Shown here in pieces: positions 243 to 21,082 of a stretch of DNA of 30,659 nt. A program made the position numbers and the translations under genes. Within the stretch, counting starts at the first letter, position 1. Every line of letters begins with the position of its first letter. Source of the stretch: Octopus sinensis (Eukaryota); contig NW_021832522.1 of the NCBI RefSeq assembly GCF_006345805.1, forward strand, positions 1 through 30,659. The letters are read 5' to 3'. The notes under the pieces are model-generated. The model did no database searches and had not been told where the DNA came from. It worked only from the letters and a program-made list of their open reading frames with translations.

Positions 243-1084
243 ATGGAAGTAACATTCTACTACGAAAGAAGTAAATAAAACTTTTCAAACAAAAAAGCCA
301 ATTTTAGCTAAAACAAATGCTCCCGACAAAAGCTGTAATGAATTTTTGTATTAAAATATCAGATACAAATAATAACATCAAAATTTCCCAGATTGCCAAT
401 AACGCCATCATTGGTTTTTCTGGGAACATGTATGTTTTGGATTTCTTGGAGCAAGAATTTTCTCGTTATTTTCTGTATTTTTTGAATTAATTTGTTTTCT
501 AGACGGTCTTGGAATGTATACCTAATGTTTTTGAAGGATTTTATTAAAAAAATTCTATCAAATTTCATACTTCCACACCAATTATCGGTATATTTGAGTT
601 CTTGTTATATTTTTAGACCGTTATTCTCTTATGTGTGCATAATGCAGGAATTTATCAATTTGCAATAAATTCCTTCTCAACTGTAGACTGCACATGTCGC
701 GTTACGACAATCGGGTCAGGCGGAATAAGGACGCGTACTTGGATAAATATGCAGTATTTTCTTTTATAATCATTGCCAGTTATCGTGGAATTCATACAAC
801 ACAGAGTGAGGCTATTGAGTTAGCCCACAATGCCATTAAACATGCAGCACTGACTGATCGATTTACTGGAGGATTTTCCAATAGTATATTTGCATATATA
901 ATACTTTAGTTGAATTTATAATTTATGAATTTATAAATGAATATAATGAGGAAAGTTAATTATTATATATTTAAGATATGAATATGTTTATATTAATAAA
1001 ATTTAAATAAATTATTAGTATACTTTAGTTTATACAATCTCGATTCTTGGAATAAATTTTGTCGTCCTTTTTCAGCTTTTTTAA
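243..1084 (+). CDS. Divergent 20S proteasome beta subunit (beta5-like), multi-exon with micro-introns
   Basis: Removing GT-AG introns at about 271-307, 335-362, 475-502, 588-616, 755-780 and 884-1028 gives ...KISQIANNAIIGFSG...TIGSGGIRTRTWINMHYRGIHTTQSEAIELAHNAIKHAALTDRFTGGFSNIYTISILG. This aligns by eye to beta5 (VGSGS...[32 protein letters not shown]). The start codon and N-terminal exons are uncertain. Confidence 0.75.
921..1022 (+). repeat. Copy 1 of a ~102-bp AT-rich direct repeat, inside an insertion bounded by an 11-bp duplication
   Basis: Matches 1901-2003 except for one substitution and one indel. ATACTTTAGTT occurs on both sides, at 901-911 and 1020-1030. Confidence 0.9.
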
Positions 1085-2435: not shown

Positions 2436-5249
2436 ATGGAGTCTTGTGAGTTCACGTGCAAAATAATCGAAAGTATAAAGAATTTTAAAGTATTAAATTC
2501 ATTTAATAAAAGAACGAAATTGAAGATAATATCAAATACGAGAACTTGAAGTCTGCAATAAGAAATCATCTTAGCCGGCCTTTAAAGAACATTATCAAAT
2601 CAGTAGACACACTCTCATCTCAAGAAAATGCTCACAACATTTTTTTCGACATTATCCGCCTGGATATTGGCAATGTTTCAGAGAATTCTATTCTTCTTCG
2701 TGCTTATTTCGTCATAGTTCTCCAGTTTGACTGGCTAGATTACTTCATCAAAGTAATTTACTCAAAAAACTCTTAGAAAAGTGGTTCGTTGAGCCCCGCT
2801 GAGCAAATTCCACTTTACGCGAATCTTATTTCTGTCTTAAACGAAAGTGAACCTGGAAATTCGCTGTTTCCGGCAAAATTTCAGCAAATTTTTATTTTCA
2901 TATTTTCCGATGAAAACAGCTTTGTTTTTAAAAAACCGGAAACTGATTATTTCACTTTGATTGAGGCCGCAATGACCACATTGATGGATAGATTTACTCC
3001 CAAATTCGTGCTCAAAATATACCTGAACTACTCTTTGCTTCTCAATCAACAGGAATTAAAATTTTTCGATATTTTTACCCGCAATGTTGGGATTTTAGTC
3101 AAAAATGGACGGGTTGGTCTTGATTTTGTACTTTCTCTAATCCTCGATATGTTTTTAAAAGTCGATTCCTCTTCTTTTGCTCAGTTTCTGGTCCTTCGCA
3201 GTGTTCCTATCAATTTCTCCTTTTATAAGTGCATTGAGCCTTTGATAAAATTCTTTGATTTGTCAACCAGTGACCTCATAAACCAGCTTCCGTGGGAACC
3301 AAGACAAGTTTTATTGTCCGTCAAGTCGGTTGTTGGGCTGTGTGGAGGATCTGTACCAACCTGTGGAGATATTTTATGTTGGCTACTCGAATTTATTCCC
3401 GGAAAGACCTCAAAGAATGAAGTTATGAGGGAAATGTATCTCTCGTCTGATCATTGCTTAGTTTTGATGCCATTCATTCAGCATTCAATCAGAATTTCCG
3501 AATATTTGAGGATATTTCGACCTGGCTGCTCCTCACCGACTTGATGAGACTATTTAAGGACCAGGGCGGACATCGAGTTAAATTTGCGGATTAATTTTAG
3601 TTATTACGGGATCTTTTTAAAAAACAGTCCCGCAAATTCCGGTCCTCACTCCCTCCCTTGGAATGTCCGTTGGATATCGAGACTTTGTGTGAGAAGGGAC
3701 TATCGACTTGTAGTGATTGGTCATTGGAGTGGTCATTTTTTGCTTCTTATTACAAAACTGCGGTCAGACTGGTTCAAGAATTTATTAAAGCTAAACCAGA
3801 ACACGTCAATTTGACTAGAATTTGCAGAGAATTTACCAAAAGGACTGATTTGCTGAGAATTTTGGGAGAAAATGTAACAGTCTTCTGTTCAGACGAGTCC
3901 CTGTTAACAAGTCGACTCGAGTTTTTGATTTCTGTTTTGTAATTTTTGATATTTTTAGAAAAATTGTCTCGTCGATGGATTTTTGGACAGTTTTTATGAT
4001 TTGGTTGTCGCCCCTGTGATTGATGCATGTTCCCTCAACAGTCCCAAGTCGGCAATTTATTCAACTCTTACTGTTGCAGAGGTAGACTACTCAAATGACT
4101 ATTTTAGACTTTTTGTGTCAGCTGTGATAGGAATACGACTGAAGTTGTCAAGTTTATACTTTATTTGTTGGATTTCACTCATTTTTTGTTTAAAAACTCA
4201 GAGAGTGGTGAGATGGTCCCCAATCCTTCCCACTTTATGTACGTCAAAAGTAGGGTTTTGGGGTCTTTGGTGTGCATTTCTAAGGTGGAGACAGTCCGCG
4301 AAGCTGTTTCAAGTTGATTGCAAATAAATCGAATTTAGACGTGTTAAATGACATTCATTCCCCCACACTTTTGACTCATTTCTACGTAAAACAAATATTC
4401 GGAATATCGTCACACAAACTGACAACCCAGTTGACTATGTTTGCTAATATTTAGTGAGTTGTCTGGACAGGATTGCCTGGGAGTGGCCGATCTGGTAAAC
4501 CTTGCTCGCTCTGGCTGTTTACAAGCACACGTTAAGGTGGATTACTGTCATTTGCTGTTGGCTGTTTCGTCAGTTAATGACTTTTGGGGTTGATTTTGAT
4601 AGATTGTGCCGCATTGCACGTCTCGGGAGTTTAGATCAGTTGTCGAATTCTGTTCTTCTCTCATCTGTCCAGACACCTGTTGTGAAAACCATTTGGCATG
4701 TATTATTCAATATTCTGACCCACTAATAGCTGCAGCCACGTTTTCGTCAGTTTCGACATTCTTGTGTCATTTGATGTCTGTGCTGTTGCCCAATTTGTCT
4801 GATTTTGGCGACTATCGACGACAGCTTACGGGATATTATTTAAGCTTCGTTCGAGTTAGTTTATGTGCTGATTGGACAGAAGAAATTGTTGGTGGATGCT
4901 CAGTGTTTTGTCAATGAGACGATTCGAGGACTAGTGCTGGACGAATTGAAGCATCAGCTTACTAATCTTGTTGCGTTGCTGATGGACAGGGACTGTGATG
5001 AATTCTCTATGATCAACTCGGTTATTTTTTCGTTGACTCAATGAGTTTTTGAATGTGTGGTTTTTTGAGGGGTTTAAAATATGCGACTGAGTTAAAATTT
5101 TTTGTTAATTTGAGTAGCTATGGACTTTTTTATAACACTGATTTTCACTGAATGATTTAATTATGTAATAATTTTGCTCAGCTGAGTATCCTCGTGACAT
5201 GCCAGCTCCGCAAGTTGATCTTCGTTATCAACCTGGATTATTGAATTAA
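2436..5249 (+). CDS. Unidentified multi-exon protein of roughly 800 aa, no recognised domain
   Basis: ORF-track pieces 2546, 2789, 3658, 3983 and 4606 can be joined through phase-compatible micro-introns, for example the 23-nt gtattaaattcatttaataaaag, 2753-2776, 3436-3461 and 3939-3958. The 3' exon structure and stop codon are approximate. Confidence 0.65.
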
Positions 5250-5333
5250 TTTATTATAATGAAGGTATGTTTTTAATTAAAATACTATTAATTAAAACAC
5301 GATAATAGTCTCAGTTTTTAAAATACACTCACA

Positions 5334-8107
5334 ATGTGGCACCGAAACATGGTTTGTTTAAATCAGAAAAATTATTATTTGTAGAAGCTAGTGAAATTTT
5401 TTCCAGATAAATTAAAAAATTTTATACGAAATGTTAGCCATCAAATAGAGTATGGGAACAGGTTTTTAATAAAAATTACCTCAAGCATTCTAACAGTGGA
5501 AACCGATAAAATAGGACGACAGGCTGCCGGGTCAGTCTTGGTTCAAGTAAATTATTTTTGAATTATTTTGAGTGCAAAAATTGCACAATGATAAGTTCAA
5601 TCGTCGCTGTCAATCAAGCAGCCGCCGTCGGACCATCTTTGAATGTTTTTTGTACATTTAAATATTTTTTGGTCGATTTCAAATCACGAAATAAACAGGA
5701 AGGGCAAATCAACAATAAAAGGAAACCAAATGTCAATATTGAGACCCAAGTTCTGACAAGCAGACTGATCGGTTTTTGTATTTTTATCACATTAGACCGA
5801 TCAATCAGACCGATTTTGGACCCTCGGATGGACTTTGCTCTCAACGTTAGTATTTTGTTTTGTAATTCCAAAGATGCACGTTAAATCTCTTTCTACTGAC
5901 CATACATTTGATTCCGAGGTTTTGGGCATCAATGCGGGTTATTAAAATTTGGTTTTCTTTTTTAGGATCTCTGAGTCTGGTTTCTTCCCATTTGCCCATT
6001 AACCGAACAGTCGCAGCGATTCGGTTGGCTTTGATGCCGAATGGGTCAATAATTTTGTTTCCCTCAAAACAAGAGCTTTTAGAATGTTCAGGAAACATTG
6101 TCATGGTCGTGGACTCGAATGGAAAGATAAGTAATTGGAATTACCTCAATGAGTAGTCATGTTGGAGGGGGCCATGGATAACCAACCAACTTCCGTGGTG
6201 ATGCGAGCCATTTCCACGGCCTGGGAAAACTGTGTGCTTCTTGCAGGACGTTTTTTGAGAATTCAGAAGGAAGTGATACATTTTGATGATACAAATTCTG
6301 AAATCAACGTTCGAGAAATTTCAGGGTTTGGTCAATTTGATATAAGTAGATGTCTTAAAGACTATTTTTTGGAATTTCTAAATCTTCCGCCTTCCGATAA
6401 GGTAATTTTGTGTGCCACCTGTAGAAAAGTGGAGTTGAAGCACTCTCATTGCTCAAATCAAAGTTCACAGAAAAGGCCATTGGTTTGTAAATATACGTCT
6501 TTAGCCAAGAACTGAACATTCCTTCTGACTCTCATAACAACATATTTAACAATCTACTGACTACTCATTTCCGTGATCACATTCTTCGGTCTGAAGTGAG
6601 GACTGACGGAAGGACCTTTTCTCAAATTAGAGACGTCTCTTGTGAGGTAGATATAGCACCAGGAATACACGGTTCTGCCATTTTCCGACGGGGGGAGACA
6701 CAAGTATTAGAAAAGATTGTTCATAGTAGGTTTTGAGTTGTGTCGAGTTGTTATCCCCATATTCCACGTCACGGAGACATCCATTTTCCGCGATTACCGG
6801 GTTGGTGTTACCTGCTAATCGTGTCTCAGTGCCTGTGTCGATAAGCAATTCGAACTGATCTATGAAGTATATATTTTTTATATTTGGCTTAGTTTCCGCC
6901 TTATTCGACAAACGAGGTTAGACAGAGTGGAAACTTGAATCGAAGGGAGATGGGTCATGGTAAGAGTACTGTATGACATGTCAGGGGCACTGGCGGAGAG
7001 AGCTCTCCTTCCGACCATTCCAAAGGCGGGAAATCGGTTTTTTAGTGTATCTTGTGACGTCACGGATTCCCATGGTGTGAAAATTCGTGATTTATTCAGG
7101 CTCATCTTCAATGGCTTCCGTATGTGCTGGATCGTTGGCGTTGATGGACGCGGGAGTTCAAATCACGGAATTGGTGGCTGGGATTGCCATGGGGGTTGTG
7201 AGTACGTCATGTGGGAGACGGTGGAAGGTCATCACCGACATCACTGTTGATCAAAAATGCTATTTTTAAGGGAATGGAAGACTCCCTTGGAAACATGGAT
7301 TTTAAAGTAGCTGGAAGTGTCCGTGGATTCAATTCTATGCAGGTTAGTGTTTGTGACCATTGGGTAGTTGGATGTCAAGGGAGATGGAATATGCTTAGAT
7401 ATACTAGCAGACTCGCTGGAGAAAGGGCATGGTTTGTTATTGCAGTTATAATCTTTTTAGAGGCAATTTGTCGTTTGGTAAATCAAATGAAAACAGCAAT
7501 TGATAAGCCACGGGAATCAGTAAAGGAGTGCTGGCCTGTCAGCAGAGTATTGGAAGTGACCTCAAGTCAGCGAGCCCGCATCATTGGATCGGGGGGACAG
7601 GGACTCAGACGACATTTCAGTCAGTCTGGTTAGGCATATTTAATTATTTTTAGGTGTACTTGTTGAACCTCTTGACGAGAATTGTCTTTTTTTATTTGCT
7701 CCTTCTGTTGAGGCCTTGGAATATGCTCGAGAGGCACTGAATGAGACGATCCTTCAAAACGTATTCTAAACGATATATCATTTTCTAGAAAGAAGTAGAT
7801 TTAAAATTGTATCAAGTCTATGATGCCACAATAGTTGAAATGACGTTTGTTTTTTGAGTTATTCGTAGTGATAATGGTGTTTGGGTGAGAGTCTACAAAA
7901 CAATGCAGCCAATTTTTCTTCACTGTAATCACCTTTCTCTCGACAATGTATTTATTTTGTTATATTTTTGAGACTAAGAAACCAGCTGATCTCGGATTTT
8001 ATGAAGGGTTGAATATTCGAGTACAATATTTTGGGATTGATTCGATGACTGGCAATCATCGTTTGTCTCGGAAATTGGCTCTGACAAAAGAAATGGAAAT
8101 TAATTGA
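5334..8107 (+). CDS. PNPT1: Mitochondrial polyribonucleotide nucleotidyltransferase (PNPase), about 20 micro-introns
   Basis: The spliced frame contains [105 protein letters not shown]-type IIGSGG and an S1-type end (HRLSRKL). The N-terminus MWHRNMKLVKFF... is basic and presequence-like. No disabling lesion was found. Confidence 0.95.
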
Positions 8108-8349
8108 TTGTTGTGATTTATTGTTTTTATTGAGATAGTATTCAGTGTTGATATTTAGTTTTGCTTTTAGAGTTATTTGAATCTAGTTTGGTTCAATAAT
8201 GTTCAGAAAAACCACTTCGTAGTTGTTTTTCGTTGTCTTGAATATTCGAATCTCATTGTCTCCTTGTTAATATCTATTCCTTGTTAAATATTTAATCAGT
8301 CAATTAACTTTCATAAGCTTTAATTGCTTTTCTCCATTTTGGTCTAAAA

Positions 8350-10666
8350 CAGTGATTCTTAACGGGGGCGCTGGCGCCCCCCTGGGGGCGCTGGAACATA
8401 TTAGGGGGGCGCTGGAATTTTAATTTTTTTTAATTATTATAAATATTTTATTAGTTTTTGTAAATCATTATCACGTGCTTTTCTATTAATTCTAAATTCA
8501 AATTGTCTTGTGTGTACGTAAAAAAATTATTCACTGATAATATTTATAAATATTTGTTAATTGTATTTAATATTTTAGAACTTTTTAATAAATATTTTAA
8601 TTATATTTTATAGATGTCTGATAAAAAAGTAAAACGACGTATATATTCGGATGAATACCTAAAGTTTGGAGTGATACCCTACGACCATAACAATTCACTT
8701 CCAATGTGTCTTATGTGTAAAAAGGTCTTTACAAATGAAGGAATGAAGCCTTCAAGAATGCTAAATCATCTTAAGATTTGTCATCCTGACAAACTTGATG
8801 CGGATATCAATTATTTTTCTAATCTGAAATATAATTATGAAAATCGTCTTATGATTAATCAACTATTTACAAAAAATTCGAAGATGCTTGAAAAAGGCCT
8901 ATTAGCATCATACAAAATATCGCAATTGATAGCGAAATCAGGAAAACCTCATACTATTGGAGAGTCATTAATATTACCAGCTATCAAAGAAGTGTTAAAT
9001 TCAATGGTTGATTGTGATTCTGAACAAATAATTTCATCAATTCCTTTGAGTAATAGTTCTGTTTCTTCCAGAATTGATGAAATGGCATTTGATATCGAAG
9101 AAACCCTATGTGCATTTTTAAGAACAACAAAATTTTCAATTCAGATTGATGAATCGACATTCAACGATAGTGTTGCACTTTTATTAGTTTACGTACGTTA
9201 TATTAATCAAAATGATGTAATTCAAGAAGAATTTTTATTTTCTGAACACCTTGAACTCGATACAAGAGGATTAACAATTTTCAAAACTGTTGAACAATAT
9301 TTTTTGAAACATGAAATACCCCTTAGCAATATTTTTGCTTGTTCAACAGATGGGGCACCTGCGATGGTTGGAGTTCATCGTGGGTTTTTGGCATATATGA
9401 AGGAAAAAGTACCGAATATTTTTACAATCCATTGCGTCATTCACAGACAGCATTTAGCTGCGAAAAATTTAAGTGAGAGGCTGAATGAATCACTAAATGT
9501 TGTCATATGTGCAATAAATCGTATTAAAATGCACCCATTGAATTCGAGAATATTTCGACATATTTGTGAACAAAACGATGAGCATTATGAACGACTTCTT
9601 TTGCATACCCATGTTAGATGGCTTTCAAAAGGAAACTGTTTGTGTCGATTTTTTGAATTGTATGATTCAATCTTAGAATTTTGTCAGTTACATGAGCAGA
9701 GAATTTTTAGGTAATTATTCCTTAATCATTTTAGTAAGTTGATTTTATTGAAAGCTGATATAGCTTATCTAGCTGATATTTTTTATAAAATCAACCAAGT
9801 AAATATTAGCTTGCAAGGAAACAATATCAATTTAATAAATGTAAAAGGAATTATTATGCCTTTTATTGAAAAATTACAACTTTATGAAAACAATATTAAG
9901 AAAAAGATTTTTATTAATTTTCCAAATCTACAAAAATTTGGGGTTATTTTTTGTAATAATATTTATTAGGTCGAAAAATTAACGGATTCTGACTGTGAAT
10001 GCTTTTGCTTGCATCTAAAAATGTTAAAAGATGACATGAAAATCCGCTTTGAAGATTTAGAAAATTTAAAATTTTTTGATTGGTATATAAATCCATTTGA
10101 AACTGAAAACGTTAATTTATCTCAAGAAATAACAGAAAATTTATTAAATCTGAAATATGACTTTGAAGCTAAAGTCATTTTCAACAAATATGGATATCAA
10201 CAATTCTGGGTTACTCATAGAAAAAAATATCCTTTATTGTGGAATGAAATTGAAACACTTATAATAGCATTTCCTTCAACATATCTAGTTGAAAGAGGAT
10301 TTAGTGCAGTCTCTAATATTTTGACCAAAAAAAGAAATAAATTACAAATTGTGAATAGAGGAGATTTGAGACTAAGTCTGTCGACTATTGAAGCTGACAT
10401 AAAACGATTGACAAATTCCCATCAAGCACAAGGCAGTCACTAAAATTTTTTTATATAAAAAAGTTTGGTTTGTGAATACCCTTTTTAATTCTAAAAAATA
10501 ATAAGTAATATTCGAAAATATTAAAATGAAACAATTGGCGAAAAAATTGCCAAATAAATCTATAATTGAAAAAAAATAAATTAAATAATAGGGGGGCGCT
10601 GAAATTTTGAAGCTTCGAAATTGTGTCAAAAGGGGGCGCTGACTTAAAAAAGGTTAAGAACCACTG
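8350..10666 (+). mobile_element. hAT DNA transposon, Buster/Charlie (ZBED5/SCAND3-like) family, full length
   Basis: TIRs are CAGTGATTCTTAAC and CAGTGGTTCTTAAC (13/14). The 8-bp TSD GTCTAAAA is perfect (8342-8349, 10667-10674) with a central TA. Subterminal GGGGGCGCTG repeats number three on the left and two on the right. Confidence 0.96.
8614..10443 (+). CDS. Buster-type hAT transposase, 592 aa after removing two micro-introns
   Basis: Exons 8614-9710, 9735-9942 and 9970-10443 total 1779 nt. It has a BED finger (CLMC...HLKICH), QIDEST, TDGAPAM, HCVIH, RWLSKG and STYLVERGFS. Introns are 9711-9734 (24 nt) and 9943-9969 (27 nt). Confidence 0.9.
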
Positions 10667-11004
10667 GTCTAAAACATTTAGAGTTCAGACAAGGTAAACG
10701 GACAGGTAATCAAAAATACAGTCGGACCTCGTTATGAGCCAGACCTCGGGTATGATCCATACTCGCTTATGATACAAACTCTATTTTTGAGCCACGTTTT
10801 TTGAAACTGCTTTTTTCCTAAGGGGTTTGTAAAAATCAATTAAAAATAGACCTCGTTATGAGCCATCTAAAAATTGCTATAAACTAAATATTTTGTAATA
10901 TAATTATTTTTATTTTATATATTTTATCGTTTTTTTTAAAGAATTTTTTCCTTGCCGCGTTGTTATCTTTGTTGAAGTATTTTTCACTGTTCTATGTTTT
11001 CTAG

Positions 11005-13271
11005 ATGCCTAAAATGAAAATTGATCACGAAAAAAAACTCGAAATAGCCCAATATATTAAACGGAACCAGCTTTCAGAGCGCAGAATTGCGGAAATTTTC
11101 AAAGTTAGCAGGGCTACAATTTCACGTATAAAAAAAGATTTCCCTTTTCTTGATAATGGAACTATTTATTCTGATTTATCCGAGCAAACTAGTGATTCTG
11201 AAAAGCTTAAAAATCTCGATCTTTAAGTTTTCGAAAAATTTCACAAATTGCGACTTGAAAAAGTTCCCTTATCTGGACCGACCATTAAGAAAATTGGGTC
11301 GATGGTCGCTTCAAAATTATCATTGAATAATTTCAAATCGTCTAATGGTTGGCTTCAAAGATTCAAGAAACGACATAATTTACAATACAAAACATTGTGT
11401 GGTGAAAAGGGTTCCGCAGATACATCCATGCTCCCTCATTTTTTCCAAGAATTAGATACAAAAGTTGTTTATTATGGTAAAGAAAATGTATTTAATTGCG
11501 ACGAAACTGCACTTTATTTCAAAAATACACCAATTAAGTCATTTGTACAATGTGGTGAAAATTCGTTTGGTTTTAAGCAGCACAAGGAAAGGTTTAGCCT
11601 GCTTCTATGCTGCAGTTATCTTGGAGAGAAACTGGAGCCTTTAATTATCGGCAAATATCGAAACCCTCGGTGCTTAAAACAATTCTATTCTGATGTTTTT
11701 AACGTCATGTACTCTTCTTCTAAAATTCGTGGATGACAACTGAAATTTTTAAAAGCTGAGTTTTTAAATTAAATACCAGAATGCTTTCTGAAAACCGAAA
11801 AATATTAATGTTGTTGAATAATGCTAGTTCTCATAGACCAGGCCTGGCCAACCCAAATCGCATCGCGGGCCACTTTGTCCAAATGAATCCTTTCCGCGGG
11901 CCGCATATACATGTACATACTAAGGATAGATATCAAAACAACACAGATAAGATTTTATTTAGTAAAATAGCATTCAGTCCAATTATACGTATCAATGAGA
12001 AATCTGTTTTTCTTTATCTTCACTTAATTTTTTCAAATCAACTTCACAATTACTAGTTGCACATCTTAATTGGTTTTCTAAGTTTTTATCTGTTAAAGAA
12101 GATCTATATCTACTTTTACTAAACTTAATTTCGAAAAGAATGATTCACATACGTAAGTAGATCCAAAGGAGCTTAAAACTCTTTGTGCAAAAATTCTTAA
12201 GTTGGGATATTTTTCTGCAGTCACATATTGTTATAAAAGTCAATTTTGGATATAGTAGGATAAACAAGTCTTAGTTCACTGTTGCACTGTAGGTCAATTA
12301 TTCCGTCTGCAAAGTATTTGAAACAATAGAAAACGTCAACATGAAATGGAGAAGAAAATGTTTCAAACATTTTCTCATATTTTTTTAGTTCCGAGAATCG
12401 ACTGTCAAATGCTGCAGCAAGATTTTTTTATTCATCAGCGTACTTGAAGAAATTTTTACAATGGCTGATTTTAATTGATTTAGCGTTGGAAAATGTTGAT
12501 CATTTCCATTTCTTATTTGACATTCAACAATGACAATTTCATTCGAAATGCTTTGACTTGATGGCATGCATTAGTAATCAAATTATCCTGTCCTTGTAAC
12601 TCCTTGTTTAATTGATTAATTTTTTCGGTTATATCTAACAAAAGCACAGATCTAGCATCCATTCTTCATCATTTAATTCAGGTAATGTCATTTTCTTATG
12701 CATCATAAAACTTTTGATTTCTTCTCTCAAGTCGAAAAAACGTTTTAAACATTTTCCGCGACTCAGCCATCTGACATTGGAAAAATACACAAGATCACCA
12801 TAGTGAGAATATAACTCGTTCAATAATTCTTTAAACTGGCGATGTTGAAGTGCATGAGAACGAATGAAGTTTATAGTTCTTACAACCACACTCATAACAT
12901 GGTTCATAGACAACACTTGCGCGCACAAATTGTGTTGATGTATCAAGCAGTGTATTACCAAATAATCATTTTTTATGCTTCTTGACTCCATCTCATCCAT
13001 TATTAGCTTTACAACTCCTTTATTTCTTCCAATTTCACAAAATTTCTCTCGCGGGCCGCGGCCTTGGGTTGGCCAGCCCTGTCATAGACTATCCGATTAT
13101 TCAAACATTGAATTTTTATATTTACCTAAAAACACTACATCGTTAGTTCAGCCATTGGATATGGGCATAATTAAAGCACTGAAGACAAATTACAGTAATT
13201 TACTTATCGAATTTGTATGCATTTGTGAAAATAGAAGCAATTTTTTGGAAGCAATCAAAAGTCTCAAATAA
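11005..13271 (+). pseudogene. Tigger-like transposase pseudogene
   Basis: It has CENP-B-type HTH segments (SNGWLQRFKKRH), FNCDETALYF and QPLDMGII. Lesions are an in-frame stop at 11224-11226, a frameshift near 11730, the second catalytic D read as N (LLNNASSH), and the insertion at 11839-13081. Confidence 0.9.
11839..13081 (-). mobile_element. Internally deleted hAT (SPIN/GTF2IRD2-like) nested in the Tigger element
   Basis: TIRs CAGG(C/G)CTGGCCAACCCAA match at 17/18. The 8-bp TSD TCATAGAC is perfect (11831-11838, 13082-13089). The minus strand encodes HCLIHQHNL, VRWLSRG and FGSTYVCESFFS with frameshifts; the N-terminal half is deleted. Confidence 0.95.
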
Positions 13272-13568
13272 ATGATTTCTACGCCCTAAGGAAAAAAATA
13301 ATGATTAATTTACGGGATTAAAAATCGTTTTGGAGAAAAGATTACGCATTATTTCAAAAAAGTATAACTTATGAACTGTTTCTATCTGTTTCTTGTGAAT
13401 ATTTTTTACTTAAAGTACTGTTAATTAGGATTATTAGCGAACCTCGGTTTATGATACAACCTCGGTTTATGAGCCACCAAGTGGCTCAAACCGAGGTCCG
13501 ACTGTACTTAGAAATCTACAATTCATAAACAGATTTTGATTCAGTACGATTTTGACTAGAAGTGATAT

Positions 13569-13975
13569 GTTATTATTAACACACTTATTGTAGGGCTATA
13601 ATAATTATAGTTCCACCTGTGCAACATCCAAAACAATGTTAGTAACGAGTCTCCTTCATTTTCCTCGTTTAAGCGCTGTGAGCCGCAGCCTGTCCAAGTC
13701 ATCATCGGTCTTGAGACAGGATTTGATTTTGGCGAGGTCCGCTTTCAGAAAGACAGGTAACGTAGTGTGTAGGCGTTCCCGGAACCGTGGTTTGTCGCAT
13801 TGGAAGTAATCCTCCATCACCGTATTTGCGGGTGCGGACTGGTCCATTTGCAGTATGTGTCCAAATAGCTTCCAGCGGGATTCAGCAACGTCAATGCAAA
13901 GTGGCCTTGTAGAACACTTTATATATAACGACTCCCGGGATATTCTATAAAGACACTCGGGGTAGCTCTATTGCA
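13569..13975 (-). mobile_element. 3' end of an APE-RT (RTE-like) non-LTR element, opposite in orientation to its body
   Basis: The minus strand reads ISRESLYIKC...ESRWKLFGHILQMDQSAPAN...TTLPVFLKADL, then a short UTR with a stem-loop and a TAATAA-like end abutting AGTGATAT. Confidence 0.85.
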
Positions 13976-13977
13976 CA

Positions 13978-16399
13978 ATGTCTGGAAAACGCCTTAATTC
14001 ACTGTTGGGACTATCTATCGTCACTTTTAATGTCAGGGGAATCTCCAATACATATAAAAGAAAACAATTGTGCAAAGATTTTGAGAGATACAATGTATCA
14101 ATCGGATGTATACAAGAAACGAAGGTCTTGGAAGGGGCTGATGAATCATATGGAAACTACCGTCTAATACTACTTCCCAGCATATCGAAGCACTATGGGC
14201 AGGGATTCATTGTCCATAAGACTCTAGCCCCTGGAATTCATCGTGTATGATGTGTAAATGATATAATCTGTGTTTTGCAAATAAAGACATGTGACAAAGG
14301 AAAATCGAGGGGAATTATCTCCATTATTAATGTCTATGTCCCACATTCTAGGATTGTTGTGAAAGACCCAGAAGTTTTAATCATATTCTACTCTGAGCTA
14401 TCCAAAGTCTATACCGAACTTGAATCCTCTTTTATAATATTCATTACGGGTGATTTCAATGCCAAAGTTGGCGTTCAAAAAGGATTACAATTCATGGGAA
14501 GACATGGATGCGGTATAAAAAACTTATCTGGGTGCTTCCTTGCGAATTTTCTGTCTGTTATGTGACTTATTTATATGCAATACTGCTTTTCAGCACCCTG
14601 CACGTCACAAAACGACATGATGAATCAATCTATATATACAATCAAATTGATTATATTCTCTGTCGGATGAATGACAAAAGCTTTCTGCTTGACTCACGCT
14701 CTTATGGAGGATCAACTGTCGACAGTGATCACAAAATCGTTATGGCTATGATTAGCATTAAAATCCATCTCGTGTTCTTAAAAAAGACTATACCAAAAAT
14801 TCTAGAGAAGCCGGATATATGATCGGAAAGCTAACCTTTAATCTACTTATTCAAGAAGCTTATAAACAACACATTGAATGTCTATTGAAAAACCTGGACA
14901 TGCCTCAGTCAAATCAAGACATTTGGAATAGCGGATAAGCATATCGGAAAGAAGATTGAAACTAGAGGAAAACTTATGAAAGCCTGCCATCCTGAAGTTC
15001 CAATGATATCCTTAAGGCAAAAAAATGTCAGGCTTAAATTACAAAATACTATTGACGCGAATAAAAAACAGATTTTAAAAACAGATTGTAATTCTTTGAA
15101 ATGGCAAATAAAGAAACTAAAAAACGAGCACATAAGAAATCTAATGAGGACTAATATAAATGAAATCGAAAACTTAAAAGATGGTGCACAAATGTTTGCA
15201 GGAGCCCGTCTGCTAAAAAATAAGGAACAAAAAACTCACCTAAGAATACATGACTTTGAGGAAAGAATTATACTTTACCCTCAGTAACAAACAAAAGTCA
15301 TCGAAAACCACTTTGAGAAGCAATTTAACACATTAAATGGATCTCTGGATGCTTTTGTCGGACCCTAAAGAGAATTAGTAATTCCGATTACGTCTGAAGA
15401 AGTGCAATCAGCAATTTTAAAATTGAGGAACAATCGATCTTCGAGACCCGATAACATTAACCCCGAACTACTGAAATACGGGCCATATATACTATTTGAA
15501 ACCATTGCTAAATTGCTGAACGATATGTTCACATCGAATTCTTCTCTACCTGTGGGGAAAGGCATTCTAATCCCAATTCAAAAGCCACATAAGCCGAAAG
15601 GCCCTTTGGAGAACCTACGGCCGGTCATTCTTTTAGACTCTCTTCAAAAAGTGCTTGCACTGATCATCCTGAAGCGAATAAAAGAGCCTGTCAACGAATA
15701 CCTCTCTGCCAGTCATAGTGGGTTCAGACAAGGGAGATCCACAGCGGATATTGTATGGAGCCATCGATGGAGATGCACTATATCTCAAAGATTCAAATGT
15801 GCAACCACGCTTTTGGGAATTGACATGTCCAGGGTCTTTGACACAATAATCAGGGCAAAGCTGATTGAGGTGTTATAACGCTTTTTGGATGAAAGCTCGG
15901 TTAGAGTAATTAGATTGCTTTTTGCCAACACTGAACTTGAATTAAGAATATACTTGGAGTCTGCATTACGAGATCTAAGACCATATTACAAAGGTGGAAC
16001 CAAGAAAACAATTTATGCCGATGACGTGGAATTGATATCCGAAGACAGATCCTCATTAATAGAACTTCTCGAACTTGCACCGGAGCAATTAAGAAAATGG
16101 TTCCTTTATGTAAACAAAAAAAAACTGATCTTGTGGAAGATGGCGCCATGTACAAAAACTTGGCTCTCTTCTGGGAAACAGTGAGGATATTGCAAGGAGA
16201 AAAATGCTGCCATCTGCAGTAATGCACAAACTCTGAAAGAAATGACTATCATATGAATCAGCGAATGTTCAACTCCGGACAAGGCTTTACAATGCCTTTG
16301 TGAAATCCGTGTTAATGTATAACTCCGCCATTTGTGGTTGCACAGATACGGAACTGACACGTTTTAACAGTTTCCACAGAGGACAATTGAGAGTGATAT
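13978..16399 (+). pseudogene. APE endonuclease plus reverse transcriptase ORF of an RTE-like LINE, degenerate
   Basis: APE motifs: TFNVRG, CIQET, NVYVP, GDFNAKVG, NQIDYIL, SDH. RT motifs: RPVILL, SGFRQGRSTAD, IDMSRVFDT, YADD. Many stops and frameshifts; the frame ends at ...LRVI. Confidence 0.92.
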
Positions 16400-16469: not shown

Positions 16470-18690
16470 GTTCTTAAGTTCCTGGCGAAGTTTCTAGACC
16501 AATTTTTACAAAAGCTGGTCATCCCATCGGTCTTTCCCCATCTCCACGATCTGGGCTTACTGGCCCTAGCACCAAAAGAAGCTCGCTGACTCAAAAGCTC
16601 GTAAGATAATATTATTAACAGCGGATACCGATGAGCTTGTTTAACACTTCGTTTGCAAAGAGTGAGTTGACATTTCTAACGTCTATCATTTTTTTTACAT
16701 CTTCGACGATTTTGTTTGCAGATTTCAAGTCCATTTTTCAGTGCAGTACTAATGCGCATGCAGTCATCCAAAATGTTCCGAGGCCGATTATTGGCATAGA
16801 ATTCAACCATAACCCGGTGTTTGGCACAGTTACAGAGCATAAACAGACGAGTCGATGCAGGTTAAGCCTCTTTGAAAGGTTTCTGACGTGGATTGGGAGC
16901 GTAAATTTTTCCAGGTTTGTTAGAATGATGTTTGGAATGGGAATTTTAATCCTGAATCTTTCCACAGCATACATCCATCTTCAAAAGGCTTTTCCAAAGA
17001 AGATTCTGGGGATTTATGTAGAATCTCCAAAGATAGCCTTTGGATGGATAGTGAGATAACAAAAAGGCGCGAGGACAAGCTCCAGGGCAAATCTTGAGCC
17101 AGCTCCGCCAGAATTAAGTAGTAGTTCACATTGCGTTCACCTATCATCATAGAAATAAATGTTTAAAATAGACTCGGCGCACAATCTTAACGTATTATCG
17201 ATAGATTGCAATATTTCATCTTGTATACGGCAAAGAGAGCATCTTAATAAGCATAATAAGTCGGGACGTGGATGCAATTGTTGAGGAGGAAAAAGGCCGT
17301 GTAGGAGTCACGTAGAGAAAGGCGTTAAGAAAACGGGTCATTTAGCTCGGAGGTGGTTTTGCAATCCGGACTCTCCAAAAGAATCATTAAGGTGTGTTTG
17401 TTTTGTGCCTGCCAAGATTTCCGAAATATTCGCTATTATTAAGTCAAAATGTTGGGATTGAAATTTTTATGATGTCAGTTTTTTGTTGTTGACTTTTAGC
17501 CTTATTTTTGCTAGGGCAGGAACAATTTTAGATAACTCATTCATGAACATATCAACGGGGCCTCCAATAGTGGCATCGTCGAAGTACCAGCGGTTGAAAG
17601 GTGTCTTAACATTACGAACTACCTCGTTGAATTCCTGTCCGGGAATGAATTATTTGTTTGTCAAAGACATGCAAAATTTCGGACTCGTAATTAAGATGAT
17701 CCAGTCTCATGATTTCAGGCGTACACTGCAAGCACGATTCCAACATACAATTCTTCCTCAGGCTATAGAACGCGTTTGAGATATCCAGCTTTACTGCGAA
17801 GGTATTCGGGAAATTCTTACGTCGGTTGAAAAAAACCCTTGTCGCATAGACAGCGGCTTCATATCCGTTGAGAACACTAACTTCCAATTGACCTCGAGAT
17901 AATTCAGCAGCAACACGGAGACATACTCTTTGGGCTGCAATTTTATAGACATTACCGAATGCAATAGAGTGAACACCGCCATCATTTTTTCGAAAAGCAG
18001 TAAAATGTGAATTAAAAAGAAGATCCCTAGCTAAGCATGGGATCTCAGCATTGATGATCGGTTAGACAAGTTTGGTAATAAATTTGATCAGGTAGATTCC
18101 AACTTCCATAGTCAATTGAAAAATCATGTTCTTATATGACTCGGCTAGAGACTATTAATTCCCCCACTGTTACTCGGTCTGAAAAATCCCTTCCGAGATT
18201 TCTTGGTAAGAAATTGACAATGTAGGAGCACTGTCTCGTGTTGGAAACTTCCCTATGTCATCAGAGGGCATTGGATGTCTGTTTTTTGAGGTGCTCAAAA
18301 GTCTCGGCAGTATATTCAGCAAGTGAATCTGCCGACAAAAAACTCAAACGGCTGCAGGGATGTTGCAATCCGTGAGTTCACGACTGACTTGGGTTTCGAA
18401 CCACTGACGGGATTTTTCAAGAAACTAAGTGCATTGTTTGTTCAAAGATCAATCAGATCTTCCTTGGGTTCATGATCATCTGACATAATTTTCAGATTAT
18501 AAGAAAATAGACTCAGAATCCATTCATTCAAAATATTTAGATCCGTTCTAAAATATCCTTCCAAAGATGTGGAAAATACTTATAAATGAGACATCATTCC
18601 TCTACGAAGAGTAGGATTTATTGAATTGTCGACCACTTTTGAAGGTTGGGAAATTCGTGAGATTGTATATTTCTATTCTCCGACGTCAGA
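16470..18690 (-). mobile_element. Degenerate CRE-clade non-LTR retrotransposon (RT plus partial restriction-like endonuclease region)
   Basis: Minus-strand remnants include FRKNDGGV, EAAVYATR, VKLDISNAF, TGIQ.G, PNTGLWLNSMPIIGLG and DRGDGERP. Many frameshifts; the boundaries are approximate. Confidence 0.85.
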
Positions 18691-19420
18691 AATAATTTAT
18701 TTTTGAATGCAGCCATTTTAACTATGTTAAAGACATCTATTCCTTTTGTGGACATTTATAATTTTTTACAAAACAAAAAATCTTCTTTCAATGCACCATC
18801 ATGAAAATACTTAACTAGTGCAATAAGTTTACCACAATAAGAGACATCAGTTGATTTGTCCAACTAAAAAGATATAAAAAAGACTTGATTTGATCTCTAA
18901 TAATTTTTGACAAAATATCATTGCTTAACTCACATATTCGACTGTGAATCATATTATTGGATAGCGGGATTGATTCAATCTTTTGTCTTAACTCTGTTCC
19001 GAGTATTAATGAGAGCATTTCCAATGCACATGATTTAATCAAATTTTTTCCGACTGTATATGGCTTTTTAGACCTTGCGGTGTTATAGGCCAATTTATAA
19101 GAGGCAAAAAAATCGGTTTATCAAAATATACAAATCCTTAGTTAGGAAGAGTCACTTGCGAATGCAAATCATATTGAGTTCCCTTGATTTTTAGAAATTC
19201 AAAATCATTTTTGCTGCTATTAGTTCCACCATGTTTATTTAAAAAGTCCTCTTCCATTTTGGAATGTTTCATATTCTGGTTAGAGAATATAACATCACAT
19301 AAGAAAAATTTGGGTCTTTGGAGATTATCGATTTTAGTATATGTAAATCCAAAACGGACATTATCATCATTTTACTTTATTTTTTCATATTGTGCGTCAT
19401 GCTTTTAATTCTTTAAAATG
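18690..19420 (-). mobile_element. 5' fragment of a second Buster/Charlie (ZBED5-like) hAT transposase
   Basis: The minus strand reads ..NVRFGFTY..RPKFFLCDVIFSNQNMK.. then SYKLAYNTARSKKPYTVGKNLIK..IPLSNN..QLDKSTD. It is truncated where the CRE fragment begins, and no TIR was seen. Confidence 0.8.
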
Positions 19421-19628: not shown

Positions 19629-21082
19629 CAGTGCGACCTCGAATTGGGGAAATTTTTCCCCAATTTTGAGGTTTTCCCCCAAAAAAAGGTTTTTCATTAA
19701 ATTTAGGTCTCGCCTGTTCGATATCTCTCTTAATAATATAACCGAGACGGATAACTACAATTTTTATTTTTTAATAAAAAAATCAGTTAATTTTAATCGA
19801 GTGTTTTGTTTTTTTCGCATCGAACTCATAATATTTGCTTTGAATCTGAATAGATCAAGTACATTTTCCGGAGTCTCTTGCTTTAATAACATTTAGCAGC
19901 ATTGTGAATGCGCATTCCGCATTGTTTATAACTTGTTGATCATCCAAATGTTCCATAAATTGTTCGCTGCAGTCCTCTTAAAATGATTCTTAAATGCCTT
20001 TATTATCCCTTGGTCACATGGCTGAATTAAGGAACTTGTATTTTTTGGAAAAAATATTACGTCGACGTTTGAAAGTTTGAGAGAAACAGCATGACAAGTT
20101 GCATTATCAATTAACAATGCTATTTTCCTTCTTTTCTCTCTCATTTCCTCGTTAAATCGAGATAACCAATTTTCAAAAATATTTTTTGTCATCCAGGCTT
20201 TGCACGAAGCATCATATTCAATGCCAATTTCTCTCAGATTCACACCTTTTAATACTCTTGGTGACTTCGTACGCCCAATTATAAGCGGTTTATATTTTTC
20301 TCCTGTGTAACTGCAACACAAAAGAAGTGTCATACGTTCTTTTCTTATTTTATGTCCGCTGTGTGACTCATTTTTTTCAACAAAACTCTTTTTGGAAACA
20401 GCTTTATAAAATAATGCAGTTTCATCACAGTTGAAAATGTTTTCTCCCCCATAGTTTTCAAGCAAATCATTGAAAGTTGATCGGAAGTTTTCCACACCTT
20501 CTTTATCAGCTGATCGTGATTCGCCATGTAATATTCTGAATTTTATTTCGAATTGTTTCTTAAATCTGTAAAGCCATCCATTAGAAGCAGTGAAATTATG
20601 ATTTGAATTTCTATACGCAATTTTACGTGCAATAAGCTTTAAGGTTGGCCCATTAATTGGGAAACCTTTCGACCTGAGATTACGAAAAATCTCGTAAACT
20701 TGGGCATTCAATTCGTATCCAATTGTCCCTTCGGATGTTGAGAAACCTTGAGCTAAGATTCCTTCCCTTTTCTTTTTTAGTCGGTATAGCATTCCTTTAG
20801 AGATGTTAAATCCTTCACAAATCATTTTGTCCTTATGACCCGACTGTATATCCTTGCAAATTCTGATCTTTTCACTTTGATTTAGTTTTCTAGGCATTGA
20901 CTTTCTAAAATTTATAAAATAACTTTAAAAATTGATAATTTCAATTTTTTACCAGGTTAATTATTTCATTAAAAATCATCGTATTTTATAGGGATGGCAA
21001 AAATATTTCCCCAAAAGCAAGGTTTTCCCCAAAAAAGAGGGTTTCCCCGCTACTTGGTTTTCCCCAATTCGAGGTCGCACTG
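19629..21082 (-). mobile_element. pogo/Tigger-like DNA transposon, 1454 bp
   Basis: Perfect 24-bp TIRs CAGTGCGACCTCGAATTGGGGAAA, flanked by TA at 19627-19628 and 21083-21084. Confidence 0.96.
19926..20897 (-). CDS. Tigger-like transposase, 323 aa, DD30D triad intact, C-terminus frameshifted or deleted
   Basis: It has HTH segments, FNCDETALF, LIDNATCH and QPCDQGII, with 30 residues between the last two aspartates. The family-type tail (..KLTDFFIKK*) lies downstream in another frame. Confidence 0.88.
   Translation of the reverse strand: MPRKLNQSEKIRICKDIQSGHKDKMICEGFNISKGMLYRLKKKREGILAQGFSTSEGTIGYELNAQVYEIFRNLRSKGFPINGPTLKLIARKIAYRNSNHNFTASNGWLYRFKKQFEIKFRILHGESRSADKEGVENFRSTFNDLLENYGGENIFNCDETALFYKAVSKKSFVEKNESHSGHKIRKERMTLLLCCSYTGEKYKPLIIGRTKSPRVLKGVNLREIGIEYDASCKAWMTKNIFENWLSRFNEEMREKRRKIALLIDNATCHAVSLKLSNVDVIFFPKNTSSLIQPCDQGIIKAFKNHFKRTAANNLWNIWMINKL

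What the first reader, a model, noticed from the sequence alone, without database searches (positions are those of the whole stretch)
8614..10443. Intact Buster hAT transposase split by two host-sized micro-introns
Seen: the three ORF-track pieces join into one 592-aa transposase through GT-AG introns of 24 nt (9711-9734) and 27 nt (9943-9969). Each intron contains an in-frame stop, so splicing is obligatory. The element has 13/14 TIRs, a perfect TSD and all hAT catalytic motifs. Established: Buster/Charlie transposases are usually single-exon ORFs. Inference: the spliced spacing between FEL and IAYL (24 aa) fits the family length as I recall it. That points to intron gain during residence in this micro-intron genome, in an element that may still be active.
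Basis: partly seen in the sequence, partly recalled or inferred. Interest (0 to 1): 0.72.

Follow-up and report, generated by a model that had tools for sequence, protein, structure and literature searches.

The report
Active Buster transposon with two micro-introns
A recently active hAT/Buster jumping gene can make its full enzyme only if two tiny introns (24 and 27 bases) are spliced out; it sits in DNA that is filed as octopus but almost certainly comes from a dicyemid, a kidney parasite of octopus whose own genes have equally tiny introns.

Summary
Window 8350-10666 is a 2,317-bp hAT/Buster element with 13/14 TIRs and a perfect 8-bp TSD. Its single reading frame is broken only by TAA at 9712 and TAG at 9967. 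Removing GT..AG segments 9711-9734 (24 nt) and 9943-9969 (27 nt) gives a 592-aa transposase that is collinear end to end with 106 relatives and keeps 116 of 119 near-invariant residues, including the DDE triad.

- **Intron 1** is a pure 8-codon insertion: relatives have 15-18 residues there, the spliced form 17, the unspliced 25.
- **Intron 2** lies in a length-variable linker, so gain and intronisation cannot be told apart.
- **Host:** an alanine aminotransferase gene on the same contig has seven verified introns of 23-31 nt. The window is a whole contig of the "Octopus sinensis" assembly, but it looks like dicyemid DNA.
- **Activity:** five insertions with different TSDs carry both introns and show no substitutions, so transposition was very recent.

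Splicing itself is not shown, because no RNA data could be reached. The element is best called a new variant of a known kind: transposase genes with host-type introns are already known.

The parts
8342..8349 (.). Left target-site duplication GTCTAAAA
   Evidence: Identical to 10667-10674. TA at positions 4-5 fits the TcBuster consensus nnnTAnnn (PMC3499496).
8350..8363 (+). Left terminal inverted repeat CAGTGATTCTTAAC
   Evidence: 13/14 complementary to the right end. Identical in all copies.
8364..8414 (+). Left subterminal repeats: GGGGGCGCTG at 8364, 8384 and 8405. Presumed transposase-binding sites (inference).
   Evidence: The motif occurs five times in the 30.6-kb window, only in the element's subtermini and always on the + strand.
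8614..9710 (+). Exon 1: residues 1-365 plus two bases of codon 366. Holds the BED-type zinc finger (C32, C35, H52, H57), D179, D246, CxxH 274-277 and RW 335-336.
   Evidence: Homolog search with E down to 1e-150 against Buster-type proteins.
9711..9734 (+). Intron 1: 24 nt, GT..AG, phase 2, GC 21%. The in-frame TAA (9712-9714) is part of the GTAA donor.
   Evidence: It is an 8-codon insertion relative to all 106 relatives. Identical in all six assembled copies.
9735..9942 (+). Exon 2: residues 366-435, part of the all-alpha insertion domain.
   Evidence: Conserved positions D374, Y377, N386, L392, Q393, G394, K403, F409 and F428 are kept.
9943..9969 (+). Intron 2: 27 nt, GT..AG, phase 0, GC 11%. 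The in-frame TAG (9967-9969) is the acceptor itself.
   Evidence: Removal gives a 16-residue linker; relatives have 11-24, with a mode of 13. The unspliced form would have 25. Identical in all copies.
9970..10443 (+). Exon 3: residues 436-592 plus the TAA stop. Holds E543 and the C-terminal hAT dimerisation region; ends in HQAQGSH, as relatives do.
10592..10641 (+). Right subterminal repeats: GGGGGCGCTG at 10592 and 10632.
10653..10666 (+). Right terminal inverted repeat GTTAAGAACCACTG
10667..10674 (.). Right target-site duplication GTCTAAAA
25036..26654 (-). Host yardstick (not part of the element): alanine aminotransferase gene with seven introns of 27, 31, 23, 25, 27, 25 and 27 nt.
   Evidence: The spliced 477-aa product aligns 1-477 with human ALT2 (3IHJ) at E = 4e-159, with no gap at any junction. 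All three 27-nt introns carry in-frame stops if retained.

Best explanation
This is an autonomous hAT/Buster cut-and-paste DNA transposon living in a dicyemid (mesozoan) genome. Its transposase gene carries two genuine spliceosomal micro-introns of the host's own size class, 24 and 27 nt. The host spliceosome must remove both to produce the 592-aa DDE transposase. That enzyme then (inference from hAT biology) binds the subterminal GGGGGCGCTG repeats through its N-terminal zinc finger, excises the element at the CAGTG termini and reinserts it with an 8-bp duplication of nnnTAnnn-type targets. Both introns are multiples of 3 and each carries an in-frame stop. An unspliced message therefore cannot be read through: it would be degraded by nonsense-mediated decay, or it would give a 366-aa N-terminal fragment that has the DNA-binding domain and two of the three catalytic residues. 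Such a fragment could act as a repressor (inference). Intron 1 was gained as a 24-nt insertion after this lineage split from its intronless relatives. Intron 2 was either gained the same way or carved out of a variable linker. Shown: the anatomy, the insertion status of intron 1, the host's intron size, the multiple identical copies with separate TSDs, and the conserved residues. Inferred: that splicing occurs, that the element supplies its own transposase, and the fate of the unspliced message.
For: (1) Anatomy: GT..AG boundaries, 24 and 27 nt, and GC of 21% and 11% against 29.6% for the exons. (2) Host intron size: host introns on the same contig are 23-31 nt; the published Dicyema median is 27 bp, with splice signals reduced to 'GTa' and 'AG' (PMC6543705, PMC13644364). 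(3) Insertion status: intron 1 is an exact 8-codon surplus over 106 relatives, and the closest relative is one uninterrupted ORF. (4) Intact product: the spliced protein is full length from the first to the last family residue and keeps 116 of 119 columns that are at least 95% conserved, including 35 of the 36 downstream of the first stop. (5) Host pattern: the three 3n host introns in ALT also carry in-frame stops. This matches the NMD-linked pattern described for Paramecium (Jaillon 2008, as cited in PMC3464196). (6) Recent activity: five insertions (window, L001, L002, L003 twice) have different perfect 8-bp TSDs, differ only by single-base indels, nearly all in homopolymer runs, with no clear substitution, and all carry both introns unchanged. 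An allelic contig is 100% identical. (7) No other transposase source: no protein above 62% identity other than this element's own products exists in the 5.8-billion-protein collection, so no intronless helper is visible. (8) Chance: about 0.002-0.006 for both stops being excisable this way. (9) Independent ranking: a naive ORF-chaining search ranks this gene, with exactly these two introns, as the best chain in the window.
Against: No transcript evidence was found. No spliced-form protein is in the protein collection, and neither the spliced nor the unspliced junction is in JGI metagenome contigs. Because the copies are identical, sequence cannot show selection acting since the introns arose. 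The dicyemid DNA in hand is only what contaminates an octopus assembly, so an intronless master copy elsewhere in the genome cannot be excluded. Four of the five independent copies carry frameshifting homopolymer indels; I read these as long-read assembly errors, but they could be real. The Pfam hAT dimerisation hit is just under threshold (20.7 against 21.4 bits).
Confidence: 0.78

Rival explanations
1. The copies are non-autonomous. Two small insertions, each bringing a stop codon, killed the transposase gene, and the copies were spread in trans by an intact, insertion-free sister element not present in the data.
For: Sharing of both segments by all copies is equally expected if a defective copy was amplified in trans. 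No RNA evidence for splicing was found. Only part of the parasite genome is available.
Against: Both insertions would have to start with GT, end with AG, fall in the host's 23-31-nt intron range and be very AT-rich by chance, at about 0.002-0.006. Apart from the two stops the ORF is perfect and keeps 116 of 119 conserved residues. No protein above 62% identity that could be the helper exists in the collection, which includes the annotation of this same assembly.
Confidence: 0.12
2. The segments are spliced, but at least intron 2 was not inserted. It arose by intronisation: part of an ancestral, longer coding linker acquired a stop and began to be spliced out.
For: The linker between FPNL and C-HL varies from 11 to 24 residues among 106 relatives. 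Near relatives P0003 and P0032 have 21, against 16 for the spliced form and 25 for the unspliced.
Against: The unspliced length of 25 exceeds every relative. The segment has 11% GC and would encode VIFCNNIY, unlike the acidic or polar linkers of relatives. This reading cannot apply to intron 1, where the length is nearly fixed at 17.
Confidence: 0.25
3. There are no introns. The host reads TAA/TAG as sense codons, as in a ciliate-type code, or reads through them, so the gene is one 609-codon ORF.
For: Both segments are multiples of 3 and in frame, and some ciliates with reassigned stops also have tiny introns.
Against: The transposase ends on TAA exactly at the family's conserved C-terminus HQAQGSH, and ALT ends on TAA where human ALT2 ends. 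There is no other in-frame TAA or TAG in 592 plus 477 codons. The eight extra residues at site 1 are absent from all relatives. The ALT protein is most similar (54-59%) to protostome animal proteins.
Confidence: 0.02
4. The segments or stops are sequencing or assembly artefacts.
For: The assembly shows homopolymer indels in other copies.
Against: Both segments are identical in six independently assembled instances on five contigs. They are 24 and 27 nt of complex sequence, not homopolymer slips.
Confidence: 0.01

Closest known systems
TcBuster / AeBuster1 (active insect Buster elements of the hAT superfamily)
   Same: 8-bp TSD with TA at positions 4-5 (4 of 5 insertions; consensus from PMC3499496). 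Short CAG-initiated TIRs. A transposase of about 590-640 aa with an N-terminal zinc finger, the DDE triad, RW and CxxH motifs and a C-terminal hAT dimerisation region. The nearest database relatives carry Buster-derived names: SCAND3-like, ZBED5/8-like, FAM200.
   Different: In those elements, as I recall them, and in the nearest relative checked at DNA level (P0003: one uninterrupted 598-codon ORF; the other 105 were compared as proteins only), there are no extra residues at these two positions. Here two obligatory micro-introns interrupt the ORF. Identity to the nearest relative is only about 58%.
Transposase genes with introns: Ac (maize), Tol2 (medaka), P element (Drosophila)
   Same: A DNA transposon whose transposase mRNA must be spliced by the host. 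In the P element, retention of one intron yields a truncated repressor; the analogous 366-aa product is possible here (my own knowledge; inference).
   Different: Those introns are of ordinary size and are old features of their families. Here the introns are 24 and 27 nt, the size found among animals only in dicyemids and myxobolids (PMC13644364). At least one is a lineage-specific gain.
Paramecium germline transposons Sardine, Thon, Anchois (Tc1/mariner)
   Same: Mobile elements in a micro-intron genome whose ORFs are annotated with predicted host-type tiny introns (PMC3464196, supporting information legend).
   Different: They belong to a ciliate, to another superfamily and to a different genetic code, and their introns are only predicted. 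No comparison with intronless relatives showing gain was reported there.
Introners / introner-like elements (introns that spread as mobile copies)
   Same: Both link mobile DNA with intron gain.
   Different: The direction is opposite. Here a transposon gene has acquired introns. The intron sequences are unique, with no other copy within 3 mismatches in the window, so they are not members of a dispersed intron family.
Domesticated Buster genes (ZBED5, ZBED8/Buster3, SCAND3/ZBED9, ZMYM6) and intron gain in domesticated transposases (PMC3257199)
   Same: Same protein family. Intron gain in transposase-derived coding sequence has been documented in mammals.
   Different: Those are immobile host genes without TIRs. 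This element has TIRs and TSDs and at least five identical copies at different sites, so it is a live transposon.

Membership tests
hAT superfamily | 8-bp target-site duplication | tested here: met
   Five independent insertions each have a perfect 8-bp TSD: GTCTAAAA, TTTTAACC, GTCTGGAC, CTCTAGTC, ATCTACAT.
hAT superfamily | Short terminal inverted repeats (about 10-25 bp) | tested here: met
   14-bp TIRs, 13/14 complementary, identical in all copies.
hAT superfamily | DDE catalytic triad with conserved W and CxxH, in a transposase collinear with family members | tested here: met
   D179, D246, E543, W336 and C274/H277 sit in columns at least 95% conserved among 106 relatives; 116 of 119 such columns are kept. 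This is sequence-level only; no structure was made.
hAT superfamily | C-terminal hAT dimerisation domain (Pfam PF05699) | tested here: inconclusive
   E = 3.6e-4 and 20.7 bits against a curated cut-off of 21.4. The region aligns fully with relatives.
Buster family of hAT | Closest relatives are Buster-type transposases or Buster-derived genes | tested here: met
   Best hits are named SCAND3-like, ZBED8-like, ZBED5-like, FAM200 and ZMYM6-like, with E down to 1e-150 and 49-62% identity. No phylogenetic tree against Ac-type hATs was built.
Buster family of hAT | TSD consensus nnnTAnnn | tested here: met
   TA at positions 4-5 in 4 of 5 TSDs; the fifth has TG. Consensus taken from PMC3499496.
Spliceosomal GT-AG intron of the host's micro-intron class | GT donor, AG acceptor, length within the host's distribution | tested here: met
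   24 and 27 nt, against 23-31 nt in the ALT gene of the same contig and the Dicyema median of 27 bp (PMC6543705).
Spliceosomal GT-AG intron of the host's micro-intron class | Precise removal restores an ORF collinear with intronless relatives | tested here: met
   Site 1: spliced 17 residues, relatives 15-18. Site 2: spliced 16, relatives 11-24. The product has the family's N- and C-termini.
Spliceosomal GT-AG intron of the host's micro-intron class | Branch-point-like A residues upstream of the acceptor | tested here: inconclusive
   AA lies 8-9 nt (intron 1) and 10-14 nt (intron 2) from the 3' end. That is compatible with the weak A signal reported for D. japonicum (PMC13644364), but AT-rich sequence makes the feature uninformative.
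Spliceosomal GT-AG intron of the host's micro-intron class | Actual removal from the mRNA | not testable with these tools
   No RNA reads were available. No spliced-form protein is in the collection, and there is no match in metagenome contigs.
Autonomous transposon | Encodes its own complete transposase | tested here: inconclusive
   The transposase is complete only if both introns are spliced. No alternative helper is visible, but the genome sample is partial.
Introner-like mobile introns | Many near-identical intron copies dispersed in the genome | tested here: not met
   Neither intron sequence recurs within 3 mismatches in the window. In the other loci they occur only inside copies of the element.
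Dicyemid host genome | Animal genome with introns mostly under 30 nt, repeat-rich, about 37% GC, associated with octopus | tested here: met
   Host introns are 23-31 nt. The window is TE-rich with 28-43% GC. The contig comes from an O. sinensis assembly, yet its ALT is only 54% identical to Octopus vulgaris ALT. Published traits are in PMC6736024, PMC6543705 and PMC13644364. No dicyemid reference sequence was available for direct comparison, so the species is not identified.

The most novel reading that the evidence does not exclude
In dicyemids splice signals have shrunk to little more than GTA...AG at a spacing of 20-30 nt. In such a genome almost any small AT-rich insertion with those ends may be spliced, so de novo intron gain becomes easy. 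On this reading the transposon records two such gains caught very young. A side effect would be that the element is locked to its host: its transposase cannot be made in any organism, including the octopus it lives in, whose spliceosome cannot remove 24-27-nt introns. Intron retention would give a built-in truncated repressor, as with the P element.
Probability: 0.3. Interest if true: 0.72.

Novelty: new variant of a known kind. Interest (0 to 1): 0.6.

Why it matters
How new spliceosomal introns arise is an old and poorly documented question, because clean, young and unambiguous gains are rare. Here one intron is a precise 24-nt surplus over more than 100 intronless relatives. It sits in a gene that exists in several identical, recently transposed copies, in the animal lineage with nearly the shortest introns known. 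That makes three things directly testable:
- Gain can be dated by comparing Dicyema species.
- Splicing efficiency and retention can be measured from existing dicyemid RNA-seq.
- The element offers a natural minimal-intron reporter.

It also bears on whether introns can confine a transposon to its host. On the practical side, contigs of the public Octopus sinensis assembly, and RefSeq proteins built on them (XP_029656380.1, XP_029655404.1, XP_029655988.1), are probably dicyemid sequences with mis-modelled genes.

Tried and rejected
**Pfam on the three pieces separately.** Only weak hits came back (zf-C2H2_12, DUF4371, and Dimer_Tnp_hAT just under its cut-off). The newer FAM200/ZBED5 families seen on relatives are not in the local library.

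**PDB sequence search with piece 1.** No hit.

**Exact look-up of the 366-aa piece 1.** Not on record.

**Search for spliced-form or intronless near-identical proteins.** A junction-spanning spliced query (not a read-through) found nothing above 54% identity.

**Scan of JGI metagenome contigs.** A pattern matching either the spliced or the unspliced junction 1 gave no hits.

**Search for other copies of the intron sequences.** None found, so the introner idea was rejected.

**Micro-introns in other transposons**
- The pogo-like element at 10719-13504 has a plain nonsense codon, a frameshift and a nested hAT.
- The pogo-like element at 19629-21082 has an uninterrupted but truncated ORF.
- A second hAT family in L002 at 6000-7850 has frameshifts, not introns.
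- The feature is therefore not general in the data at hand.

**Older diverged copies of the same family.** Other Buster-like fragments are only 27-45% identical, so they were no help in dating the introns.

**Tandem duplication of an AGGT site as the origin of intron 1.** The exon end and the intron end share TTTTAG, but the flanks are otherwise dissimilar (read), so there is no support.

**Ciliate genetic code.** Rejected (see rivals).

**Toy ORF-chaining gene finder.** It recovers the transposase structure exactly but over-fits parts of ALT and the PNPase-like gene. Its host-intron list is used only qualitatively.

**Structure prediction.** Not attempted. It would not discriminate between the explanations, and the spliced sequence is not a literal window translation.

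**Note on the read-through.** In one search the unspliced frame was translated inside a local script, only to display codons next to P0003. No read-through protein was given to any search tool.
Full report
**1. What is in the sequence**

Window 8350-10666 is a complete class II element. It has 14-bp terminal inverted repeats (CAGTGATTCTTAAC and CAGTGGTTCTTAAC, 13/14) and is flanked by a perfect 8-bp duplication, GTCTAAAA. The motif GGGGGCGCTG occurs three times inside the left end and twice inside the right end, and nowhere else in the 30.6-kb window.

One reading frame runs from ATG 8614 to TAA 10443. It is interrupted by just two in-frame stops, TAA at 9712 and TAG at 9967. Each stop lies in a GT..AG segment whose length is a multiple of three: 9711-9734 (24 nt) and 9943-9969 (27 nt). 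Removing both yields a 592-codon ORF. No alternative GT/AG pair nearby removes either stop while keeping the frame.

**2. Is it a Buster transposase, and is it intact?**

- Piece 1 finds hundreds of proteins of about 590-600 aa (E down to 1e-150, 52-62% identity). Their sources name them SCAND3-like, ZBED8-like, ZBED5-like, FAM200 or ZMYM6-like, which are all Buster-type hAT transposases or their domesticated descendants.
- Against 106 full-length relatives, the spliced protein starts and ends where they do (MS..KK..YS.EYLK.G at the start, HQAQGSH at the end).
- It keeps 116 of the 119 columns that are at least 95% conserved. These include the zinc-finger C/H residues, D179, D246, E543, W336 and C274/H277. 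It also keeps 35 of the 36 conserved positions downstream of the first stop.
- Pfam's hAT dimerisation domain is hit just below its threshold.
- TSDs of five insertions have TA at positions 4-5 in four cases. This is the TcBuster consensus nnnTAnnn (PMC3499496).

**3.

Between the anchors LEF and D[IV]AYL, the 106 relatives have 15-18 residues, and 89 of them have 17. The spliced protein has 17 and the unspliced frame would have 25. Intron 1 is therefore a clean 8-codon surplus with no counterpart in any relative. The closest relative, P0003, is a single uninterrupted 598-codon ORF on its contig.

Intron 2 lies in a linker that varies from 11 to 24 residues (mode 13). The spliced form has 16 and the unspliced would have 25, longer than every relative. 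The segment is 11% GC and would encode VIFCNNIY, unlike the polar or acidic linkers elsewhere. Insertion is the likelier origin, but intronisation of a formerly longer linker is not excluded.

**4. Are the introns "host-sized", and who is the host?**

On the minus strand of the same contig (26654-25036) lies an alanine aminotransferase gene. Removing seven short segments of 27, 31, 23, 25, 27, 25 and 27 nt gives a 477-aa protein. It aligns over residues 1-477 with human ALT2 (PDB 3IHJ) at E = 4e-159, with no gap at any junction. Six of the segments are GT..AG; the 31-nt one, as I drew it, is GC..AG. A simple ORF-chaining search also strings other host genes together through 18-33-nt GT..AG segments. 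It ranks the transposase, with exactly the two proposed introns, as the best chain in the window (that tool over-fits and is used only qualitatively).

The window turns out to be the whole WGS contig VCDQ01008797.1 (30,659 bp) of GCA_006345805.1, the "Octopus sinensis" assembly. Three observations argue against an octopus origin:
- Among animals, introns under 30 nt are known only from dicyemids and myxobolid myxozoans (PMC13644364).
- Dicyema has a median intron of 27 bp, 36.7% GC and 49% repeats (PMC6543705, PMC6736024), and D. japonicum is collected from the renal sac of O. sinensis (PMC6736024).
- The window's ALT is only 54% identical to Octopus vulgaris ALT and 54-59% to other protostomes.

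The most economical reading is dicyemid DNA co-assembled with its host. The genetic code is standard. Both ALT and the transposase end on TAA at the family-conserved C-terminus, and neither contains any other in-frame TAA or TAG.

**5. Do the two segments look like the host's introns?**

- Published dicyemid splice signals are minimal: "GTa" at the 5' end, only "AG" at the 3' end, and a few weakly conserved A residues upstream (PMC13644364).
- The element's introns are GTAATT...TTTTAG and GTTATT...TATTAG, with internal AA pairs.
- Host introns in the window include GTAATTTACTCAAAAAACTCTTAG, GTTAAATTTGCGGATTAATTTTAG and GTTCAATATTTGTGTTTAACTTTACAG.
- All three 27-nt ALT introns would introduce an in-frame stop if retained, as do both transposon introns. 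This is the pattern attributed to NMD surveillance of unspliced messages in Paramecium (Jaillon et al. 2008, as cited in PMC3464196).
- By chance, only 8% of codons in this CDS lie within an in-frame 21-30-nt GT..AG window, and 2.9% within a 24-nt one.

**6. Copy number and activity**

Exact-sequence look-ups of NCBI's gene models led to four more contigs of the same assembly.
- Four further full-length copies were found: L001 9594-11906, L002 9469-11778, L003 9468-11783 and L003 17631-19943.
- They lie in unrelated flanks, each with its own perfect 8-bp TSD.
- They differ from the window copy only by single-base indels, nearly all in homopolymer runs, with no clear substitution.
- All carry both introns unchanged.
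- An allelic contig (L006) reproduces the window's locus at 99.4-99.9% identity and the element at 100%, which confirms the intact frame.

The family has therefore transposed very recently.

The only proteins above 62% identity in a 5.8-billion-protein collection, which includes this assembly's annotation, are truncated or chimeric Gnomon models of these same copies (P0001, P0121, P0122). No intron-free helper is visible. This argues, by inference, that the intron-bearing gene is the source of the transposase and that the introns are spliced.

**7. What is not shown**

No RNA evidence could be reached. Because the copies are identical, they carry no signal of selection since the gain. The parasite genome is only partly sampled, so trans-mobilisation of a defective lineage remains a live rival (about 0.12). 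Where the 24 nt of intron 1 came from is unknown. It has no second copy and there is no convincing sign of a local duplication.

**8. Comparison with what is known, and novelty**

Introns in transposase genes are familiar from Ac, Tol2 and the P element (my own knowledge). Predicted host-type tiny introns have been annotated in Paramecium transposons (PMC3464196). Intron gain has been described in domesticated transposase genes (PMC3257199).

What is new here is the combination:
- a member of the normally single-ORF Buster group;
- an animal host of the micro-intron class;
- a lineage-specific gain documented against more than 100 relatives;
- an element that is still multiplying.

I found no paper describing this. 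I rate it a new variant of a known kind, with interest about 0.6.

**9. Mechanism proposed**

The element is transcribed, and the dicyemid spliceosome removes both micro-introns. The 592-aa transposase then binds the subterminal repeats, excises the element at the CAGTG ends and reinserts it at nnnTAnnn targets with 8-bp duplication. The ends, the TSDs and the catalytic residues are shown; the biochemistry is inferred from hAT family knowledge. An unspliced message is either removed by NMD or gives a 366-aa DNA-binding fragment, a possible repressor. Because 24-27-nt introns are, as far as is known, unspliceable in ordinary animals, the element may be confined to its host. Both of these last points are speculative.

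Noticed in passing
whole window (= contig VCDQ01008797.1 of GCA_006345805.1); also L001-L003, L006: The window is an entire contig of the public 'Octopus sinensis' assembly. Yet its genes have 19-33-nt introns, and its ALT is only 54% identical to octopus ALT. This is probably dicyemid parasite DNA filed as octopus. NCBI models on it (XP_029656380.1; XP_029655404.1/XP_029655988.1) are truncated or chimeric: they join a PNPase-like gene, the transposase and a pogo ORF, apparently because micro-introns were not modelled.
   Followed up: partly
window 10719-13504 (+): A pogo/Tigger-like element with TA TSD and CAGTCGGACCTCG termini lies 45 bp after the Buster's right TSD. It is decayed (in-frame TAA at 11224, frameshift near 11730). 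It carries a nested 1.2-kb hAT deletion derivative at 11849-13081 (TIR CAGGCCTGGCCAACCC, TSD TCATAGAC), with a Buster-like remnant on the minus strand.
   Followed up: partly
window 19629-21082 (-): A second pogo-like element with TA TSD and CAGTGCGACCTCGAATTGGGG termini. Its uninterrupted 323-aa ORF is truncated, so it looks like an internal-deletion derivative.
   Followed up: partly
window 13978-16184 (+): A run of ORF pieces with LINE-type endonuclease and reverse-transcriptase character (decayed). This agrees with the report that LINE ORF2 copies are abundant in D. japonicum (PMC6736024).
   Followed up: no
window 2436-5044 (+) and 5334-7769 (+); 694-909 (+): Further host genes are chained through micro-introns: a large protein of unknown function (about 795 aa, nine predicted introns of 19-30 nt), a PNPase-like gene (motif GNMDFKVAG) and a proteasome-beta-like exon. 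These structures come from a toy predictor and are not verified.
   Followed up: partly
window 8364-8414 and 10592-10641: The subterminal motif GGGGGCGCTG has the same orientation at both ends of the element, not inverted. The first left copy is part of a palindrome, GGGGGCGCTGGCGCCCCC. Its meaning for transposase binding is unknown.
   Followed up: no
L003 9468-11783 and 17631-19943: Two full-length copies of the element lie about 5.8 kb apart, in the same orientation, on one contig (VCDQ01005537.1). This would fit local hopping, a known hAT habit.
   Followed up: no
window 4219-14223 vs L006: The two allelic contigs differ by 48 substitutions over 14.8 kb. None falls between 4219 and 14223, a 10-kb tract of identity that contains the Buster and most of the pogo element.
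   Followed up: no
window 18681-19105 (-) and 28029-28364 (+); L002 6000-7850 (-): There are remnants of other Buster-like hAT families, 27-45% identical to this transposase. The L002 copy is broken by frameshifts, not by micro-introns.
   Followed up: partly
window 9616-9969: NCBI's chimeric model P0122 uses a 354-nt intron (donor CAT|GTTAGA at 9616) that ends at the same acceptor, 9969, as micro-intron 2. It deletes the conserved RW motif. Whether RNA-seq supported that acceptor is unknown.
   Followed up: no
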